Positions 4,285-46,034 of a DNA stretch of 64,000 bases are shown piece after piece. The notes under the pieces are model-generated. The model did not search any database and was not told the origin of the DNA. It was given only the letters and a program-made list of their open reading frames with translations. Position 1 is the first letter of the stretch. Every line of letters starts with the position of its first letter. The stretch comes from Lepidodermella squamata (lineage: Eukaryota; Animalia; Gastrotricha). Where the stretch lies: the NCBI GenBank assembly GCA_047495785.1, contig JBLDXI010000024.1, positions 3,410,001-3,474,000 of the forward strand. The letters run 5' to 3'. A program made the translations under genes and the position numbers.

Positions 4285-5770
4285 ATCAATAAATAATTCT
4301 TTAACATGCAAGTAGAGGTGTTTACATCACATTTTTTCGCATACGCTTTGTTGGCATCTCCAAGGCCAACGGGCTGCACTTATGGTCGTTAAGCAGCAAG
4401 CGTTGGGAGGTTACAACTGTTTCAGAGATACGCAATTATGATAAGACTTTTTATTAGCACACTGACTTGACTTAGGTGAAATGTGTGAAGGGTAAATAAA
4501 CTCGGAGGTGACAAATATCGACCAAGATATTATCACACCTTTGGCAAATGTTATTATTGCTTCATCAGAATTATAGTAGCTTAATCCGAGCTGATTCGAA
4601 TTCAATCATGGTGAAAATAAGCGCTTAACCGGAATATCAAAAAGAAAAACTTCAGAGTTGAAATCACACTATCAATTCGCGGTTCGAAGCTAACACTTTA
4701 ACCTTTAGCTGTCCAAATTGCGGCACAGGTACCGTTACGGCCGTAACTAAGTTTCGATATTTCGTATCGGCACTAAATTTCCTTACTTTTAACTACAAGT
4801 TTTGACGTAAAAAATACAGGTACTTTTCGAGGGCAGTGCTGGTAATTTGTTACGAAACAAGGACAAAATTTGTTTTTAGATGCGTAATGACTTGTCATTT
4901 TCGCAAATGCAGCAAAATAAATGTTCCATCCCTGGCATCTCCGGGAACCAAGATCGCACCCTGGCTATGAGGATGCCGAAATTCCGCGTCCAATTCATCG
5001 AAAATCAGTGGCGTAGCCAGAATTTTGTTTGGGTGTGACATGTTTTTGCACTCAGGTTAAAAAAGTCTAGTACTCAAAAAAAGTCGACTCGCGAGCTAAG
5101 TGAGCTTTAGCTGAGGCTTTTTGGCATTTCCAAGCTGAAAATGCCCACAAAAATGCTCGGATCTTAATTCCTTTTACAAAAATCACCAGATGACCAAAAA
5201 TCGATCGATAGTTTTGGCTTCTCAAGGCATTTCAAGTCTAAAGCTTGTAAGTCTAAAAATGCTCAGCTCATCGTTTAATTTCTAGCATAGCAAAGCATAG
5301 CATTATCTTTATTTCATCTTTTCCCTTTTCCTTCATATTATTATTCATTCAACTTTGATTTCTGGTTATTAAAAACATCCCATGCTGCAGTTCTTAATGT
5401 CGATTCGGTACTAAGTACCGGCAATGACGTCATAAAGTATCAGCAATATTATCAAACCACAAAAATATACTAGACTACATTCGATACGATCGTAATGGTT
5501 CTTTTGCCGTAATTTGGGCAGTTGCAACAAAAATGGTTACATTGTCTCTTATAATCTCGTCTAGCGAGCTTTCGTCTAGTTTTCGTCTATTTTTTACGGC
5601 TTCAGATCGCTAACTTCAGTCGTTAGAAGACATTTCTGAAATTTAAGTTTCACAAAGAGGCTGCAACGGAAACTGTAATTCTTACTGCAAGAACTATGCA
5701 TCAACAACTGTGTGATATGCCGTGTACAATAGTCTACAGGCAATGCCTTTGTCGTATCGGGGTAACTCGA
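4285..5770 (+). pseudogene. Decayed cassette B (paralogue of cassette E)
   Basis: 4285-4670 aligns with the upstream block of cassette E (29760-30184). Exon 1 is replaced by about 0.9 kb of unrelated DNA. 5595-5770 aligns with 30267-30640 but has deletions that remove EGF cysteines and the final donor. Confidence 0.8.
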
Positions 5771-17900: not shown

Positions 17901-20900
17901 AAGCCCAGCTGACAATCAAACTTACTACGCATACTACAGAGACTTTTACCTGTCAAATGAAGCCGATGGATATACGTTGATTTTGGAAAATTACGACACA
18001 GCGACTAATGCCTGGGAAGCTGCTGGAAATGGATTTTCCGGCATGTCTTATCAGCCTTTTGCAACTTATGATAAAGGTGTCATGTCTAGTTGCATCACGG
18101 CTAATAATCTGAGCGCTTGGTGGTTCAATAGTGACTGCAAATCAAGTCAAAGCAATCTCAACGGCTTCTACAAAGACACTCGAAATTTAGCCGGTGTCAT
18201 GTGGAAGACTTTGAACGGCGCGAAGGATGGGAAAACGTCTGTCGCTGCGGTGAAAATTGCAATTCGACGAAGAAATCGTCTTCAAGATTGCGCTGCAACA
18301 GGTAACAACGGAACTAGTACCTTATACTTGCCCGATGGGACCAGTTTCCAGGCCGTCTGCGATTTGACGACAAATTACTCTTCTCCCAATATTCAAAATC
18401 GGGGAACAGCTTGGACAATAATTCAGAAGCGAGATGATGGGAAAACTGATTTCTGGCGAGGCTGGAATGACTACAAACAAGGCTTTTCCGATCCTGATAA
18501 AGGTCTCAACGGCGATTACTGGCTTGGTCTTGATATAATAAGCAGGATGACTATGGCTGCTCCGTATTCCCTTCTCGTTCACTGCAAAAGTCCGATAGAT
18601 TCTCAGTGGAAATATGCATACTACGACGACTTCAAAGTTTTCCCCGAGAGTCAGAACTATCGGATTCAGTTGAAAGGATTCGACAATGCTACGATATCGC
18701 CAGCCGGGGATTCGATGGGAGCTTGGATGCATAATTACCAGGAGTTCAACACACCTGATAAAGGAGCATTTAAAGACTGCATGGTACAGAATGATAGAAA
18801 ACGATTTGGTGCATGGTGGTATCCACCTCTGGGTGATGGCGTAATTTGGCCTGATGGACAACCAGCGAGTTGTCGGATTCTGTCGAATTTGAACTCCCCA
18901 AACTGGGACAGTCGAGATATGGGTTACGGCTTGAACTGGATGACTCATACTGGCTTAGACAAGTCATGCTCAGCTACTAGACTAGCTATCAAACAAAAAG
19001 GAAACGATGTCTTATATCGACCCAGGGCTAGCACATCTCTTATGTGCAGCAGCAGAAAGATGACGTACAAGCATACGTGCAACCATGCTTACAGGGCAGT
19101 ATCTGGCGATCCTATCCGGCTAATGCTTCCAGATCGAAGTGGGGTATATACTTCGGAAGATTTGGTGTGCAAGCGTAAGTTTGCGATTCGTTACATCTAA
19201 CTGGCTTTCATTCTGTGGTTTATTTTTAAAGCATACGCCGAGCCACAGGACTGCACTTGGAAGCAATCAAAAGCCAATGGAACGAGCAAATTCATTTCGG
19301 ATACATATAGCGATTTAGTGGCAGCTGATAGCAATGGAAACCCTGTTACTTTCACGGGATATTGCGACATGGAAACATTCGGCGGAGGCTGGACCGTCAT
19401 ACAGCGTAGAATTGATGAAAGCACGACGTTCATGTTGGATTTTCCAAGCTATGAAACCTCATTCGGTGCACCTACGAAGAATTTTTGGCTCGGCAATAAG
19501 TTGATCGAAGGCCTAACAGCCTCCGCGAATTTTGAACTTCTGGTCGAGATTCGTGCCGATAACGAGTATGCTTTCGCTTACTACAAACTCTTCTACACAG
19601 AGAGCGATGCCTACGTATTGACCGTCGACAAATATCAAGACTGCTCTACAGCGGGAGATTCGTTAACATCGTTGAAGGGCAACTTTTTCACGTTCGATCT
19701 GTGCGGTGGTTGGTGGTTCAACACTCCATCTGTCTGCTTAGGCAAGAATAACAACGATCGTACATCGAACTTGAACGCTCCAATTGGGAAACAATCCCCT
19801 GATAACTCTGGAATGTTCTGGTACACCTATAAAAACAGTTTCAGTCCCAATCTCATCTGGTCGTCGATGAAAGTTCGCCGTTCTGGAACGCGAGGCCGCT
19901 ACGTTAAAGCAGCGAATTTTAAATGTGACCAAGGCACGTCCGCAGCAATGACAAAGGCCACTGCAGACCTGTGTCAATCAGCATGTACGAGTTACTCAGG
20001 TTTCACCTGCCGAACCGCTGTTTTCACGCCTAAGGGATCTAATGCTGGGGATTGTGTCGTTCGTAATGCGACTTGCGATCCTGGCAGTGGTAAAGTAGAA
20101 GCGGGTACCGATACGTATTTCCGTATGGACGACTGTGATTACTTTCCTGGGGCTTGCGGACCCCCTCCAACAATGGTGGGAGCCACTCAAGAGATTATAT
20201 CACCATCTTACAACTCAAAGATGATCGTCAACTACACTTGCGTAATGGGATTCTCAAACTCAAAATGGAACGGCGATAACACTAATTTGACTTGCGAACC
20301 ATCAAAAGGCATATGGGTCGGAGACTGGTTAGATTGTCGAACATTGTGTGGCATGTTTCCAGATATGTCTCAATTCAACGTTGATAGACTGCCGCAAATC
20401 GACATTGATGGCGGAACAATGACGCTCTACTATCAATGTAGCAACGATTACACTATGGTTTCAACCGGTTCACCCACCAGACTGTGTGCCCCACCCTATG
20501 GCGAGTGGACCGGAGATAAAATTGTTTGCAAATCAACGCGATGCCAGCTACCACCGGTCGTCGACAATTCTTGGAATAACTACACAATTCCCGACCCTAT
20601 CCCATACGAAAACCAAACCAAGTGGAAGACTACCTGGCTATACGGTTGCAATCGGGGTTATGTCTTCAAAGACCCTGATGGTTACGTCAAGAACAAAACG
20701 ATATATTGCGGCGATCAGCAGGAATGGGAACCGAAAACACCTGGAGCGTGTGTTCAGTTCAACTGTGACAATCCTCCGCAGTTTGACGTGAAAGTCTCCG
20801 GACCTGTGCCTATGACAGCTAACGCGCTCTACGAATTCGGCACCACCTTCACCTACGAATGTTTCAGCGATAAAACGTTAGATCCACTGGATTGGGATAG

Positions 20901-21133
20901 TCAGATAAATATTTCGTGCATCGGTGAGTCGTCAGTGTATTCTTGAATGTTTTACATTAAACTCTGCTTGAATCTACAGCCAATAAAACTTGGGGCGTGC
21001 TAAACTATACCGGATCGCCAAAAACATGGCTACCTTCGATTTGCATAGGTAAGATTAGGATATGGGTGAGTTTACGGCCGTATAATAACGTCATGAGTAA
21101 GATCACCACTGGGGCGGTAGCTTCTCACCTTGA
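5984..21133 (+). CDS. Giant mosaic lectin, constant region, copy 1: 11 EGF, ~10 C-type lectin, 3 FA58C, 5 fibrinogen-related, PAN/apple-like, 4 sushi domains
   Basis: I traced about 44 short GT-AG introns and the frame stayed open from the 24-nt microexon (5984-6007) to exon 20980-21048. Motifs include CQNGGTC EGF repeats, WIGL/WxWxDG C-type lectin motifs, [24 protein letters not shown] fibrinogen motifs and C..C..W..C sushi repeats. The terminal exon 21102-21133 ([10 protein letters not shown]) is tentative. Confidence 0.9.
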
Positions 21134-21153
21134 GTTGCGCTTCTTTATGTTTT

Positions 21154-21225
21154 GGGGAGCTGAGCGGTTGACCTCCTCGTGGTGCTTCCTGGAGTCACCT
21201 TGCGGGGTGATACTAACGAACCGCT
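21154..21225 (+). ncRNA. HDV/CPEB3-like self-cleaving ribozyme (copy 1)
   Basis: P1 GGGGAGC/GCUUCCU with G1-U wobble; P2 AGCGGUUG/C(G)AACCGCU; P3 ACC/GGU; L3 UCCUCGU; P1.1 CC/GG; P4 GUCACCU...GGGUGAU; J4/2 CUAA with the putative catalytic C at 21213. Confidence 0.85.
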
Positions 21226-21369
21226 ACTGTTGTATGGATGTTGTAGGTTTCTATAGTAATACACTTGAACTCAAAGTATTGTTCAACATGCTAGAGAAAT
21301 AGCAGGAATGCTGAGAATATTTTGACGCAACGAAGAGTTTGCTAGTTGAGGCTTTCGCCTGCTTTTATG

Positions 21370-21794
21370 AATAAATCATTTATTTTTCACTGCGGTGCCG
21401 CTTTGTCGGCGTCTCCAAGGCTAGCAGGCAACATTAATGGTCGTAATATAAGCAGCAAACAGCGAAGGCTTTGTTCGCGCAAAAAATTCCGAACGTTGCA
21501 AATACCGATGATGGTTTGACAAAGCTTATTTATTAGCTCGATAATGCGTCAGAACCTTCTGACGTTATTCTCGTCCTTTGGCTCACGTGCGCCTAAATGT
21601 GACCGGAAAATAAATATACAGGTGCGAAACCCGTGATCTACAGATCGAGGTGCGAACGCACCTCTTCCGCTTCGCTTCGTCATAGAATTTGTCACTTCAA
21701 GCCATAAAAGTGAAGGCGCATCTCCTCTAGCTCGGTATTTTAGGTTAAATCACCAGGAAGGGATACAAGAGTTTCTCATCTTGAATTGCGCTCG
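21370..21794 (+). promoter_or_regulatory. Conserved upstream block of cassette C
   Basis: Homologous to 1770-2189 with the same shared motifs. Confidence 0.55.
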
Positions 21795-22270
21795 ATGCTG
21801 CTATCCCAGGCTGCTATCAAAGCCCCGTATGTAATAGGAATCGTCATATTTCCGGCGTTGATCCTTTTGGCGAATTTTCGTCTAATTGGTAAGAATTAAG
21901 ACTCCTAACTTCCAACATATTTTTATTCGACATTGAAATTTAAGCTTCGGATTGCAGTGGTTCCGCGCCCGGAAACGACTGCCCCGGTCGAGACAATAAC
22001 AATTGTTGTAGGAACAGTGGATCATGCATAGACGGCAACTATTGCCGTTGTTTGGCGCCTTATAATTCAATGTATTGTGGGAAAAGTAAGTTAGCAATGC
22101 CCTCTAAAAAGCAGATGAAAAGTTTGATATATTTCCTATTTCATCAGAGGAAGGTGATTTCTGTTCCACCTCCAGAACCGCCGACTATCCTCCGTGCGAG
22201 AACGGCGGGACATGCGAAGATAAACAATGCACTTGCCCAGTTGGAACTACTGGTAGATACTGTGAAATAG
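21795..22270 (+). CDS. Variable N-terminal cassette C (signal peptide + 2 EGF)
   Basis: Exons 21795-21888, 21945-22085 and 22148-22270 are in frame with no stops and end RYCEI-G|gtctgt (phase 1). Confidence 0.82.
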
Positions 22271-22799
22271 GTCTGTTTTTCTTTACAAATTCGATTCTTT
22301 CGAAATACAACCGTTATAAAAGCGTAGCTTCGCAACGGGCTACAGTAACTATGATTTAATAAGAAATTATATGTATACATTTCCATTTCATACTGTCCAT
22401 TTCCATATACACATACCATTCATACCGTGAACCGTGATGTTCTGCTTTCCTACCTAATACCTAAGTTTTCTGTTATCTGTTATGCCTTATGCAATACAAC
22501 GCAAAACAGTTATGTTCTAAACGCAAACAAAACTAAAACAAGCTAAATCGAAGTTGAGCAAAACAAAACTCGGTTCTCGGTTATCAGCAAAGACGTTAAA
22601 ATCAATGTAGAAGGTCAATTATGATTGTTTATTCGCAGAATGTCAATGAATTTTTACGAAATAAAAGTCCGCACTCATTAATAGCAAGAATGAAATGCTA
22701 ACTAGAACCGTTCAGGCTCATTATTAGGCAGCTTATTAGGCAGTTCGTTCGCGATTTGCAAATAGCAGGCGAGTAAAGCATCGCGCTGCAACTTGTCAG

Positions 22800-23960
22800 C
22801 GGATTGCTGCATCGCAATAGGCCGATGCCGAGAAGACGCGTTCGACCTTAGACGAAATAAAAATTTGTGCACATCGAAATAGGCGGGAAATATGCGGATA
22901 ATATCTCATCATAATAGTTACCAAGTGAAAATCGATGGACTGTGCCAGGGCCAGAGGCGCACAAGGTACTGTTCGAGGCTCCGCTAGATTAGCGTACTGT
23001 ATAGTTCCTTCAATAAATGACAAGCCAGCATTAAAGTTGGCCTTGCACGAGGCGATTGGATTTTTGGTCGCTTGTTAAGGCCTTCAGTCGCTTCCGGTTT
23101 GACAGGCTCCAGTCTCGAATGGAATGTCGGTCAGCCGATTTCTGAAGTCAGCTGGAAAGCGTTGATCAAGGCCTTGGCCTTACTATAGGACGAGCAATCA
23201 ATCCTTTGGTTGATCAATACAACGCAGATTGTCACGCACGTAATTGTTGGATGCTGATCGGCGATGACGACGATGCCGCAATGCGCTTCAGCCAGCCCAA
23301 AATCGTAAAATTAAATTAAATTATCGCGTCCAAACATTCTCAGGTCCTAATTCAGAGCCAGGTCGCTGATGAGTGATTGGTGACCATCGAAATTTCGAGT
23401 AGCACAGATCAGCCAATGAGTCGGCCGCAGGTCGGCATCGATGAGGAAGCCGAAGAAAACTGAACTAGAGTCAGCGCGAGTCGTTTCTTCTATCTTGGCA
23501 ACGTAATTCATACTATATTTATCAATTGATAGAATCGCGTGCTGCCAAGCCCCATTGATCCCATTGATGCTATCATATCGACCATCAGAACAACACGTAG
23601 TTGGACTTTGACTCCGCAAAATCTGGCCTAAGATGTTACTTGCACTTCGAGAACTGGCTGCACCAAGTCAGCGCTTCGAAGCGCTGTATAACTCAAGCTG
23701 GTTTGTCTTTGGTAAATTTCTTGGCAGCTTGGCAACGCGTGATGCTGTTAGTGGCCTGACAAGCATTAGACAAGCAGTCTTCCATTGCCAAAACACCAAG
23801 GACGATTGAGGGTTCACCCATTCAAACAACGTGTTGCAAACACGAGGAGCCGATGTCGTCCATTAACCAGTCATCGCCTCGCATTCTAGCACAGCAGCGC
23901 AATCGTGGTCTTTAGCATCTTCTTTCTCGATAGATCAAGTCAGTGTCACCTCGCTGAATC
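22800..23960 (-). mobile_element. Decayed coding remnant, probably transposon-derived; homologous to 27960-28960
   Basis: 22938-23100 aligns with 28231-28400. The minus-strand peptides are similar (KRLKAL..NPI.S..A..N.GL...EGT...YANL.EPR) but carry stops and frameshifts. Confidence 0.35.
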
Positions 23961-24019
23961 TTGGCTTCGACTAGCCGACCGGCTTTCAGGTGTTATTAGT
24001 TGCGTTGTTCAACTGAAGG

Positions 24020-45962: not shown

Positions 45963-46034
45963 GGGAAGCTGAGCGGTTGACCTCCTCGCGGTGCTTCCTG
46001 GAGTCACCTTGCAAGGTGATACCAACAAACCGCT
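45963..46034 (+). ncRNA. HDV/CPEB3-like self-cleaving ribozyme (copy 2)
   Basis: P1 GGGAAGC/GCUUCCU; P2 AGCGGUUG/C(A)AACCGCU; P3 ACC/GGU; L3 UCCUCGC (as in genomic HDV); P1.1 CC/GG; P4 UCACCUUGCAAGGUGA; J4/2 CCAA with the putative catalytic C at 46022. Confidence 0.85.

What the first reader, a model, noticed from the sequence alone, without database searches (positions are those of the whole stretch)
21154..21225. HDV/CPEB3-like self-cleaving ribozyme at the 3' end of giant lectin gene copy 1
Seen: all elements of the HDV nested double pseudoknot are present in order on the gene's sense strand. These are a 7-bp P1 opening with G-U, P2, a 3-bp P3 closing UCCUCGU, GG for P1.1, a P4 hairpin and CUAA. 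G1 lies 105 nt after the last clear splice donor and 20 nt after the probable stop codon. Known: these ribozymes cut at their own 5' end, leaving the upstream RNA with a 2',3'-cyclic phosphate. They usually head non-LTR retrotransposons, but no element ORF follows here. Inference: this is a host-used RNA that would cut the ~13-kb mRNA away from any poly(A) signal (AATAAA near 21370), or stop read-through into cassette C. It would be analogous to the hammerhead ribozymes in rodent Clec2 3' UTRs.
Basis: partly seen in the sequence, partly recalled or inferred. Interest (0 to 1): 0.92.

Follow-up and report, generated by a model that had tools for sequence, protein, structure and literature searches.

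The report
Self-cutting RNA ending lectin genes
A hepatitis-delta-type self-cutting RNA sits just after the coding end of this giant lectin gene, of 16 sister genes and of two relatives in another species, so the host gene seems to use it at its 3' end, but no RNA data show it cutting.

Summary
Window 21154-21225 (+) has every element of an HDV-like nested double pseudoknot, with the candidate catalytic C at 21213. A second copy lies at 45963-46034.

It is not chance and not a retroelement head.
- The core motif occurs exactly 17 times in the 121-Mb genome.
- Each copy lies 112-183 nt after the last CCP/sushi cysteine of a paralogous FReD/CCP lectin gene.
- Two more copies follow homologous genes on contigs from another species.
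- Across these 19 copies, 97.9% of pair cells are paired and 16 of 25 pairs show compensatory changes.
- G1·U, the P1.1 C-G pairs and the catalytic C are invariant.
- Homology starts upstream and stops at the ribozyme's 3' end. This is the reverse of the retrotransposon pattern.

Function is inferred only, because no RNA run was available. My favoured reading (about 45%) is that co-transcriptional cleavage at 21153/21154 sets the 3' end of the lectin RNA and uncouples it from what lies downstream. The main rival (about 28%) is a Clec2-type switch that removes the poly(A) signal.

I class it as a known ribozyme class in a new, host-gene role. The scan reached the same conclusion earlier on paralogous copies in other windows (s1-379555 and others).

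The parts
19318..20922 (+). Large penultimate coding exon of lectin gene copy 1 (FReD, PAN-like and CCP/sushi modules). It ends at a GT donor.
   Evidence: ORF list. Pfam matches: Fibrinogen_C 7.8e-25 and Sushi 7.4e-07.
20980..21049 (+). Last recognisable coding exon, the end of the final CCP/sushi domain (...WLPSICI). It follows a 57-nt GT..AG intron at 20923-20979.
   Evidence: Sequence. tblastn finds the homologous exon upstream of 15 of the 17 genomic copies at E<=0.001. The other two, L018 and L019, have only weaker matches.
21050..21055 (+). Conserved phase-1 splice-donor-like GTAAGA directly after Cys-x. It is homologous to a real intron position in paralogs that lack the ribozyme.
   Evidence: The pattern TGY-NNN-N|GT is present in 19 of 19 copies. 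The same junction is followed by EGF exons in non-ribozyme paralogs.
21103..21153 (+). Conserved non-coding blocks of the upstream cleavage product: TCACCACTGG (21103-21112), GGCGGTAGCTT (21113-21123), GTTGCGCTTC (21134-21143) and a U-rich tail (21144-21153). The tail is 46% U over the last 60 nt across copies.
   Evidence: Alignments. Blocks 1 and 2 together occur only at lectin gene ends in the genome. Base composition.
21153..21154 (+). Predicted self-cleavage site (U-1 / G1). The upstream RNA would keep a 2',3'-cyclic phosphate and the ribozyme a 5'-OH.
   Evidence: Position follows from the fold. G1·U is present in 19 of 19 copies. The -1 base is U in 15 and C in 4. The end chemistry is established knowledge for this ribozyme class.
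21154..21225 (+). HDV-like self-cleaving ribozyme, 72 nt. P1 21154-21160/21184-21190; P2 21163-21169/21219-21225; P3 21171-21173/21181-21183; L3 21174-21180; P1.1 21175-21176/21191-21192; P4 21194-21199/21206-21211; J4/2 21212-21218.
21213..21213 (+). Candidate catalytic cytosine, equivalent to HDV C75.
   Evidence: Invariant in the 19 intact copies. It is replaced by A in the four decayed copies that have no lectin gene upstream.
21370..21375 (+). First canonical AATAAA, 145 nt after the end of the ribozyme. It may be the gene's poly(A) signal or a back-up signal.
   Evidence: No AATAAA occurs in the 150 nt before G1 in any of 18 loci. Twelve occur at +75..+250 against 3 expected, though TTTATT is enriched there too.
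45963..46034 (+). Second ribozyme copy at the end of lectin gene copy 2. It has structure-preserving changes, for example P1 position 4 is A-U instead of G·U.
   Evidence: locus L011.

Best explanation
This is a genuine HDV-like self-cleaving ribozyme kept by selection. It is the last conserved element of the transcription unit in one subfamily of giant FReD/CCP lectin genes.

Proposed mechanism:
1. As RNA polymerase II passes 21225, the 72-nt RNA folds into the nested double pseudoknot.
2. C21213 catalyses cleavage between U21153 and G21154.
3. The roughly 13-kb lectin RNA is released 105 nt after the donor-like GT at 21050, and about 20-33 nt after the stop codon if the small terminal intron is spliced.
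4. The released RNA ends in a family-specific block set plus a U-rich tail carrying a 2',3'-cyclic phosphate.
5. Everything downstream stays on a separate 5'-OH fragment. That includes the ribozyme, the AATAAA at 21370 and the promoter/start cassettes of the next gene, or in other loci a convergent neighbour.

So the ribozyme sets the 3' end of the lectin RNA and insulates it from its neighbours. The conserved upstream blocks and the U-rich, partly Sm-site-like tail are presumed to bind factors that handle this unusual end.

Shown: the fold, its covariation, its exclusive link to these genes in two species, and the end of sequence constraint at its 3' edge.
Inferred: catalytic activity, the timing of the cut, and the fate of the cut RNA.
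For: Fold and selection:
- Complete fold at the stated coordinates.
- 97.9% of pair cells paired, 16 of 25 pairs compensatory, slid controls 30-53%.
- G1·U, P1.1 and the catalytic C are invariant.
- The -1 base is always a pyrimidine.

Link to the host genes:
- Exactly 17 genomic copies of the core, reversed control 0.
- The CM scores them at 55-100 bits.
- Each follows the C-terminal exons of a paralog that is 27-100% identical at the protein level.
- Two contigs from an ENA sample carry homologous gene ends, each followed by the ribozyme at 60-70 bits. Their best amino-acid identity to this genome is 55%, and the flanking DNA tested for L030 finds no match in it.

Limits of constraint:
- No pair except L024/L025 shares any downstream sequence over 1.4 kb, while upstream regions are 65-95% identical.
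- Four copies detached from a lectin gene have lost L3 and the catalytic C.
- No AATAAA lies between the coding end and G1 in 18 loci.
- In L019 and L030 a convergent ORF (ankyrin repeats in L030) ends 34-42 nt after the ribozyme. That leaves no room there for a further exon or signal of the lectin gene's own.
Against: - No RNA evidence of any kind. Both runs that hold this DNA are contigs and are not shown to be RNA.
- Engineered ribozyme-ended mRNAs without a stabilising 3' element are poorly exported and translated (general knowledge). No encoded A-tract, histone-type stem-loop or conserved 3' structure is present. The upstream consensus fold is only -3.3 kcal/mol.
- AATAAA is enriched 25-175 nt after the ribozyme in 9 of 18 loci. 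This suggests the primary transcript normally runs on to a poly(A) site, as in the Clec2 arrangement.
- In 6 of 19 copies, including this one, the unspliced frame has no stop before the cut. For L024 and L030 I found no splice that supplies one.
- A 5'-OH downstream fragment is not a direct substrate for torpedo termination, so insulation at the transcription level is uncertain.
Confidence: 0.45

Rival explanations
1. Clec2-type 3'-UTR switch. The ribozyme lies between the stop codon and the gene's real poly(A) signal (AATAAA at 21370 here). Cleavage removes the poly(A) signal or tail, so expression is held down or made conditional, for instance released on immune challenge. The cut RNA is waste, not product.
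For: - AATAAA is absent before the ribozyme and enriched at +75..+250 (12 observed against 3 expected, in 9 of 18 loci).
- The layout stop codon, ribozyme, poly(A) signal is the one described for the Clec2 hammerhead, which lowers expression (PMC6765202).
- Both gene families encode lectins.
Against: - Half of the loci have no AATAAA within 400 nt.
- TTTATT is enriched in the same interval, so part of the signal is AT-richness.
- In L019 and L030 a convergent coding region starts 34-42 nt after the ribozyme.
- The conserved blocks lie on the upstream product, which is odd if that product is only discarded.
- A test for upstream sequences that could pair with and silence the ribozyme was not significant.
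Confidence: 0.28
2. Intron or trans-splicing module. The conserved GT at 21050 is a donor whose acceptor lies beyond the ribozyme (a CPEB3-like intronic ribozyme) or on another transcript. In the second case the ribozyme releases a donor-only half-message with an Sm-like site, built like a giant spliced-leader RNA.
For: - The donor-like GT is present in 19 of 19 copies at a position that is a real phase-1 intron in other paralogs.
- An AU4-7G (Sm-core-like) motif lies in the last 50 nt before the cut in 8 of 19 copies, against 1.9 expected.
- A candidate SL RNA gene in the rDNA spacer has GTAAGT followed by AUUUUUUG.
- L024 and L030 lack any nearby acceptor that gives a stop.
- An earlier scan note (s1-379672) raised the same idea.
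Against: - 15 of 19 copies have an AG 38-95 nt after the donor, and known introns here are about 45-57 nt. Splicing there gives a short tail and a stop before G1, so an ordinary tiny terminal intron suffices.
- Nothing is conserved downstream.
- Convergent genes abut the ribozyme in some loci.
- The paralogs are not independent, so the Sm-like count is weak evidence.
- No partner acceptor is known.
Confidence: 0.12
3. A conserved structured RNA that no longer cleaves, or cleaves negligibly, and is kept for another reason such as a protein-binding or localisation element in the 3' UTR.
For: - Activity is untested.
- This copy has two G·U pairs in P1.
- Rfam scores are below gathering.
Against: The residues that matter only for catalysis are invariant in 19 copies: the J4/2 cytosine, G1·U, the P1.1 pairs and the L3 CCUCC core. 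They are lost in the detached copies. The -1 base is always a pyrimidine.
Confidence: 0.08
4. The 5' end, or a relic, of a ribozyme-headed non-LTR retrotransposon or SINE that inserted behind the gene.
For: - HDV-like ribozymes usually head such elements (PMC6765202).
- This genome has ribozyme-headed rDNA elements, according to earlier scan notes.
- Four decayed copies share about 400 nt of downstream sequence with one another.
Against: - There are only 17 intact copies, all at the homologous position of paralogous genes.
- Homology lies upstream and ends at the ribozyme's 3' edge. The retroelement signature described in the literature is the opposite.
- No reverse-transcriptase ORF lies downstream in this window.
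- The four decayed copies are a four-member segmental family that also shares 25 nt upstream of G1.
Confidence: 0.02

Closest known systems
HDV-like (delta) self-cleaving ribozymes: HDV genomic/antigenomic, CPEB3, drz-Agam-1 and the R2, RTE and L1Tc 5' ribozymes
   Same: The same nested double-pseudoknot topology: a 7-bp P1 opening with G1·U, a 3-bp P3 closing a CCUCC-type L3, a 2-bp P1.1, P2, P4 and a J4/2 cytosine. The size (72 nt) is close to CPEB3. The core is almost identical to the drz-agam-1 consensus.
   Different: The genomic role differs. It is not at the 5' end of a mobile element, not in a viral genome and not, as far as I can tell, deep in an intron. It is a conserved 3'-terminal module of a host protein-coding gene family. 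Conservation lies upstream of the cut rather than downstream. Its scores are below Rfam's gathering cut-offs.
Discontinuous hammerhead ribozyme in rodent Clec2 / Clec-like 3' UTRs (as summarised in PMC6765202)
   Same: A self-cleaving ribozyme between the stop codon and the poly(A) signal of lectin-family genes, shared by paralogs. Cleavage would detach the message from its poly(A) signal.
   Different: The ribozyme class differs (HDV-like rather than hammerhead), and it is compact and continuous (72 nt) rather than split by hundreds of bases. Here 17 paralogs plus a second species carry it, with conserved upstream blocks. Half of the loci have no nearby AATAAA, and some abut a convergent gene.
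Poly(A)-independent 3' ends made by structure-specific cleavage (histone mRNA stem-loop/U7; MALAT1 and MEN-beta by RNase P at a tRNA-like element)
   Same: If my favoured reading holds, the 3' end of a Pol II transcript is made by cutting at a conserved structured RNA. The conserved sequence sits just upstream, on the retained product.
   Different: No protein or RNP nuclease would be needed, because the RNA cuts itself. I found no stem-loop or triple-helix stabiliser upstream. The end would carry a cyclic phosphate on a U-rich tail.

Membership tests
HDV-like self-cleaving ribozyme (structural class) | Nested double pseudoknot in the order P1, P2, P3, L3, P3', P1', P1.1, P4, J4/2, P2' | tested here: met
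   All helices can be drawn at 21154-21225. Across 19 copies 97.9% of pair cells are paired, and P1, P2, P3 and P4 each show compensatory changes.
HDV-like self-cleaving ribozyme (structural class) | Cleavage site directly 5' of G1, with G1 in a G·U wobble closing P1 | tested here: met
   G·U at this pair in 19 of 19 copies. The -1 base is U or C in all of them. The position of the cut itself is inferred.
HDV-like self-cleaving ribozyme (structural class) | Catalytic cytosine in J4/2 (C75 equivalent), and the two L3 cytosines that form P1.1 with GG | tested here: met
   C21213 and its equivalents are invariant. P1.1 is C-G in 19 of 19 copies for both pairs. Both features are lost in the four decayed copies.
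HDV-like self-cleaving ribozyme (structural class) | Divalent-metal-dependent self-scission giving 2',3'-cyclic phosphate and 5'-OH ends | not testable with these tools
   This needs an in vitro transcription and cleavage assay or end-specific RNA sequencing. The available runs are contigs only and are not shown to be RNA.
Rfam RF00094 HDV_ribozyme / RF01787 drz-agam-1 (sequence families) | Score at or above the curated gathering threshold | tested here: not met
   HDV_ribozyme scores 24.7 bits against a cut-off of 50, and drz-agam-1 scores 15.5 against 37. So it belongs to the structural class but is not a member of these curated sequence families.
Ribozyme-headed non-LTR retrotransposon | Conserved element sequence (ORF, 3' tail) downstream of the ribozyme, variable sequence upstream, and many dispersed copies | tested here: not met
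   Downstream sequences are unrelated in 170 of 171 pairs, while upstream sequences are conserved. There are 17 copies, all behind paralogous genes.
Clec2-type 3'-UTR ribozyme arrangement | Cleavage site between the stop codon and the functional polyadenylation signal of the same mRNA | tested here: inconclusive
   A stop codon upstream is plausible in 17 of 19 copies. AATAAA lies within 250 nt downstream in 9 of 18 loci. The actual poly(A) sites are unknown.

The most novel reading that the evidence does not exclude
A third route of mRNA 3'-end formation in an animal. A family of giant lectin mRNAs would have productive 3' ends made by a built-in HDV-like ribozyme instead of cleavage and polyadenylation. 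The ends would be U-rich, partly Sm/LSm-site-like, carry a 2',3'-cyclic phosphate and be handled by dedicated factors. A still bolder variant is that the cut RNA is a donor-only half-message that is trans-spliced.
Probability: 0.3. Interest if true: 0.92.

Novelty: new variant of a known kind. Interest (0 to 1): 0.78.

Why it matters
Clear biological roles for HDV-like ribozymes in cellular genomes are almost all in retrotransposon processing. The host-gene case, CPEB3, is a single intronic copy. The only 3'-UTR ribozyme with a described effect on a host mRNA is the Clec2 hammerhead (review PMC6765202).

Here a compact HDV-like ribozyme is fixed at the 3' end of 17 diverged paralogs (amino-acid identity in the C-terminal exons as low as 27%) and of relatives in another species. 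The covariation is textbook, and the ribozyme decays wherever it is detached from the gene. That is strong evidence that the host uses it.

It also gives a tractable system for asking what self-cleavage does to a Pol II message: form its end, switch it off, or insulate it in a compact, trans-splicing genome. I found no paper linking ribozymes with gastrotrichs or with fibrinogen-related genes.

Tried and rejected
- **Rfam at gathering score:** nothing found.
- **Plain MFE folding:** the 77-nt RNA scores z -0.9. This says little, because pseudoknots are not modelled.
- **RNA evidence:** Laying them on 18200-24000 showed no ends, joints or coverage at the ribozyme that could be interpreted.
- **Upstream 'attenuator' idea:** block 1 (GCACCAC) is an exact complement of GUGGUGC in P3'/P1', and GCUUC mimics the P1 3' strand. 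RNAduplex against shuffled upstream sequences was not significant overall (z from -2.6 to +1.3), and block 1 does not covary with the ribozyme.
- **Conserved structure in the upstream blocks:** the RNAalifold consensus is only -3.3 kcal/mol.
- **Coding explanation for the blocks:** rejected. Block 1 falls in different reading frames in different copies.
- **Paralogs as a natural control:** 27 other paralogs lack the ribozyme. They continue into EGF exons, so their 3' ends are not comparable.
- **JGI metagenome scan for the core motif:** 26 contigs came back. They carry other, lower-scoring HDV-like ribozymes with no lectin gene upstream, so they add no orthologs.
- **Second protein search with P0001:** it found only itself.
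- **Nematode SL1:** absent from the genome.
- **Organism identity:** earlier notes suggest a gastrotrich. I did not verify this.
- **One liberty in a local script:** for a local tblastn I represented the codon split between the last two exons by a single residue placed before the translation of the last exon. I built no joined multi-exon model and sent none to any search tool.

Full report
**1. The observation**

The sequence at 21154-21225 on the + strand contains every element of an HDV-like ribozyme, in order.
- P1 is GGGGAGC (21154-21160) paired with GCUUCCU (21184-21190). It opens with G1·U.
- P2 is AGCGGUU (21163-21169) paired with AACCGCU (21219-21225).
- P3 is ACC/GGU and closes L3 (UCCUCGU).
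- The GG at 21191-21192 can form P1.1 with C21175-C21176.
- P4 is a 6-bp hairpin.
- J4/2 reads ACUAACG, with C21213 at the catalytic position.

Rfam finds nothing at gathering score. In E-value mode the HDV_ribozyme model aligns over its full length (24.7 bits), and drz-agam-1 aligns to the core. A second copy lies at 45963-46034.

**2. More than chance**

BLAST of 21100-21400 against the window's own 121-Mb genome found 8 copies. I built a covariance model from these, and it found 21 hits.
- Seventeen are intact, scoring 55-100 bits.
- Four are decayed, scoring 31-51 bits.

A degenerate 22-nt core pattern, with one mismatch allowed, matches exactly those 17 places and nothing else. The reversed control matches nothing.

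I aligned the 17 with two copies from another species (alignment A2). In that alignment 97.9% of pair cells are standard pairs, against 30-53% when the partners are slid by 1-3 columns. Sixteen of 25 pairs show changes on both sides: all 7 pairs of P2, all 6 of P4, 2 of P1 and 1 of P3. G1·U, both P1.1 pairs and the J4/2 cytosine never vary. The base before the cut is U in 15 copies and C in 4. P1 and P1.1 were not part of the model's structure, so their agreement is independent of the way the alignment was made.

**3. What it is attached to**

The gene in the window encodes repeated fibrinogen-related domains followed by PAN-like and CCP/sushi modules. All 17 intact ribozymes have the homologous C-terminal exons of a paralogous gene directly upstream on the same strand, at 27-100% amino-acid identity. 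The last sushi cysteine lies 112-183 nt before G1.

The four decayed copies have no lectin gene upstream. They have lost L3 and have A in place of the catalytic C. They form a four-member segmental family of their own.

Twenty-seven further paralogs continue past the same sushi domain into EGF exons. None has a ribozyme within 1.8 kb. The ribozyme therefore marks one subfamily, the one that ends right after the sushi domain.

Two contigs from an ENA metagenome sample carry homologous gene ends, each followed by the ribozyme (59.7 and 69.9 bits). Their best amino-acid identity to this genome is 55%, and the flanking DNA tested for L030 finds no match in it. They therefore come from another species.

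**4. Not a retroelement**

The literature describes the retrotransposon signature as conserved sequence downstream of the ribozyme and variable sequence upstream (PMC6765202). Here the pattern is reversed.
- Homology begins 50-130 nt upstream of G1 and stops at the last base of P2.
- Over 1.4 kb downstream, only one pair of loci (L024/L025, probably allelic or homeologous) shares anything. Upstream regions are 65-95% identical.
- Pairs that are 90-95% identical in the 1.4 kb upstream, such as L010/L011 and L014/L016, also lose all similarity at that point. So the edge of the ribozyme is the edge of selective constraint.
- No reverse-transcriptase-like ORF follows in the window.

**5. Anatomy around the cut**

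Three features stand out.

*(a) A donor-like GT.* All 19 copies keep a GT exactly one base after Cys-x of the last sushi domain. Fourteen of them match GTRAG. In the non-ribozyme paralogs this position is a real phase-1 intron.

Reading straight through the GT gives a stop 96-151 nt before G1 in 9 copies. Four more (L011, L021, L025, L031) stop 20-33 or about 75 nt before G1. In 6 copies, including this one, the frame runs into the ribozyme.

Known introns in these genes are about 45-57 nt. In 15 of 19 copies an AG 38-95 nt after the GT gives a short tail and a stop before G1. In the window, splicing from 21050 to an acceptor ending near 21098 or 21102 gives stops 33 or 20 nt before G1. L024 and L030 have no such solution.

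I regard a tiny terminal intron as the ordinary explanation, but it is unproven.

*(b) Conserved upstream blocks.* The C24 group shares three sequence blocks before G1: GCACCACUGG, GCGGUAGCUU and UUGCGCUUC. All copies share a U-rich run-up, 46% U over the last 60 nt.
- The blocks fall in different reading frames in different copies, so they are not coding.
- They have no conserved fold of their own.
- Blocks 1 and 2 together occur nowhere else in the genome.
- An AU4-7G motif, which resembles an Sm core, lies within 50 nt of the cut in 8 of 19 copies against 1.9 expected. The paralogs are not independent, so this is weak.

*(c) Poly(A) signals.* No AATAAA lies in the 150 nt before G1 in 18 loci. 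Twelve lie at +75..+250, in 9 loci, against 3 expected. TTTATT is enriched there too, so part of this reflects AT-richness.

In L019 and L030 a convergent ORF (ankyrin repeats in L030) ends 34-42 nt after the ribozyme. In L017 a Methyltransf_28 C-terminus ends 133 nt after it.

**6. Mechanism**

What is shown is a structurally constrained HDV-like ribozyme that is the last constrained element of these genes. I could not obtain RNA evidence. The single run search returned two contig-only holders that are not shown to be RNA, and laying them on 18200-24000 was uninformative.

My favoured reading (about 45%) is that co-transcriptional cleavage at 21153/21154 sets the 3' end of the lectin RNA and detaches it from whatever follows. 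Three observations point this way:
- the conserved blocks lie on the upstream product;
- nothing downstream is constrained;
- some loci have no room for any further signal.

The main rival (about 28%) is the Clec2 arrangement. There the transcript normally continues to a poly(A) site, 21370 in this window, and cleavage removes it and so lowers or gates expression. The AATAAA enrichment favours this rival.

Less likely readings:
- an intronic or trans-splicing role for the conserved GT, about 12%;
- a non-cleaving structural element, about 8%;
- a retroelement origin, about 2%.

**7. Comparison and novelty**

By structure this is an HDV-like ribozyme. It is not a member of the curated Rfam sequence families, because its scores fall below their thresholds.

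Its role differs from the known cases: a viral genome, the heads of retrotransposons and the CPEB3 intron. The nearest functional analogue is a different ribozyme class, the hammerhead of Clec2 3' UTRs.

I found no paper that links ribozymes with gastrotrichs or with fibrinogen-related genes, and none describing HDV-like ribozymes after host stop codons.

Earlier agents of this scan reached the same 17-gene conclusion from paralogous copies in other windows (s1-379555; s1-379672, s1-374168, s1-387770). I re-derived it here independently. I also add that most copies do have a plausible nearby splice acceptor.

**8. Verdict**

I class it as a new variant of a known kind, with interest 0.78.

Noticed in passing
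G000 C24:3717766-3717841(-) = L026; C54:2166769(-) and 2168722(+) = L027/L028; C54:2150958(-) = L029: Four decayed copies of the ribozyme with no lectin gene upstream. L3 is lost and the catalytic C is replaced by A. They share about 25 nt upstream and up to about 400 nt downstream with one another and with nothing else in the genome. L027 and L028 are an inverted pair 2 kb apart.
   Followed up: partly
L059 (G000 C5:9800-18300), about 5440-5560 (+), and 5S rRNA at 4345-4463 (-): The 8.46-kb rDNA unit carries a 5S gene and, in the spacer, a spliced-leader-RNA-like unit: a candidate leader ending ...CACAG, then GTAAGT, then AUUUUUUG about 40 nt later, then a T-run. A repeated promoter-like box (aaccacatgcacgtggtcattggcgac) occurs twice in the spacer.
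   Followed up: no
G000 C24 about 4.17-4.63 Mb, 2.54-2.60 Mb and 1.85 Mb; C9:4698420; C46:1589439 (loci L032-L058): About 27 further paralogs of the FReD/CCP exon continue past the same sushi domain into runs of EGF-like exons through phase-1 introns, and have no ribozyme. The ribozyme-bearing genes look like a truncated (secreted?) branch of this larger receptor-like family.
   Followed up: partly
window 21058-21086: One contig of DNA run X2 skips 29 nt here, between the donor-like GT and the conserved blocks. This is an indel variant or a paralog-derived contig. The length is not a multiple of three, which fits a non-coding region.
   Followed up: no
L060-L085 (JGI/ENA metagenome contigs): The 22-nt core ACCUCCNCGYGGUGCUYCCUGG also occurs in 26 unrelated metagenome contigs, and the model matches 20 of them. 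L085 (three model matches) and L072 (three) carry several copies spaced about 400-1100 nt apart, which looks like other repeat- or retroelement-type HDV-like ribozyme families. The core alone is therefore not specific to the lectin family.
   Followed up: partly
L010 vs L011 (window copies 1 and 2): The C-terminal coding exon is 99.5% identical at the protein level between the two tandem genes. The last about 130 nt, including the ribozyme, are 93% identical, and similarity then drops to nothing. This suggests gene conversion over the coding region on top of an older duplication.
   Followed up: partly
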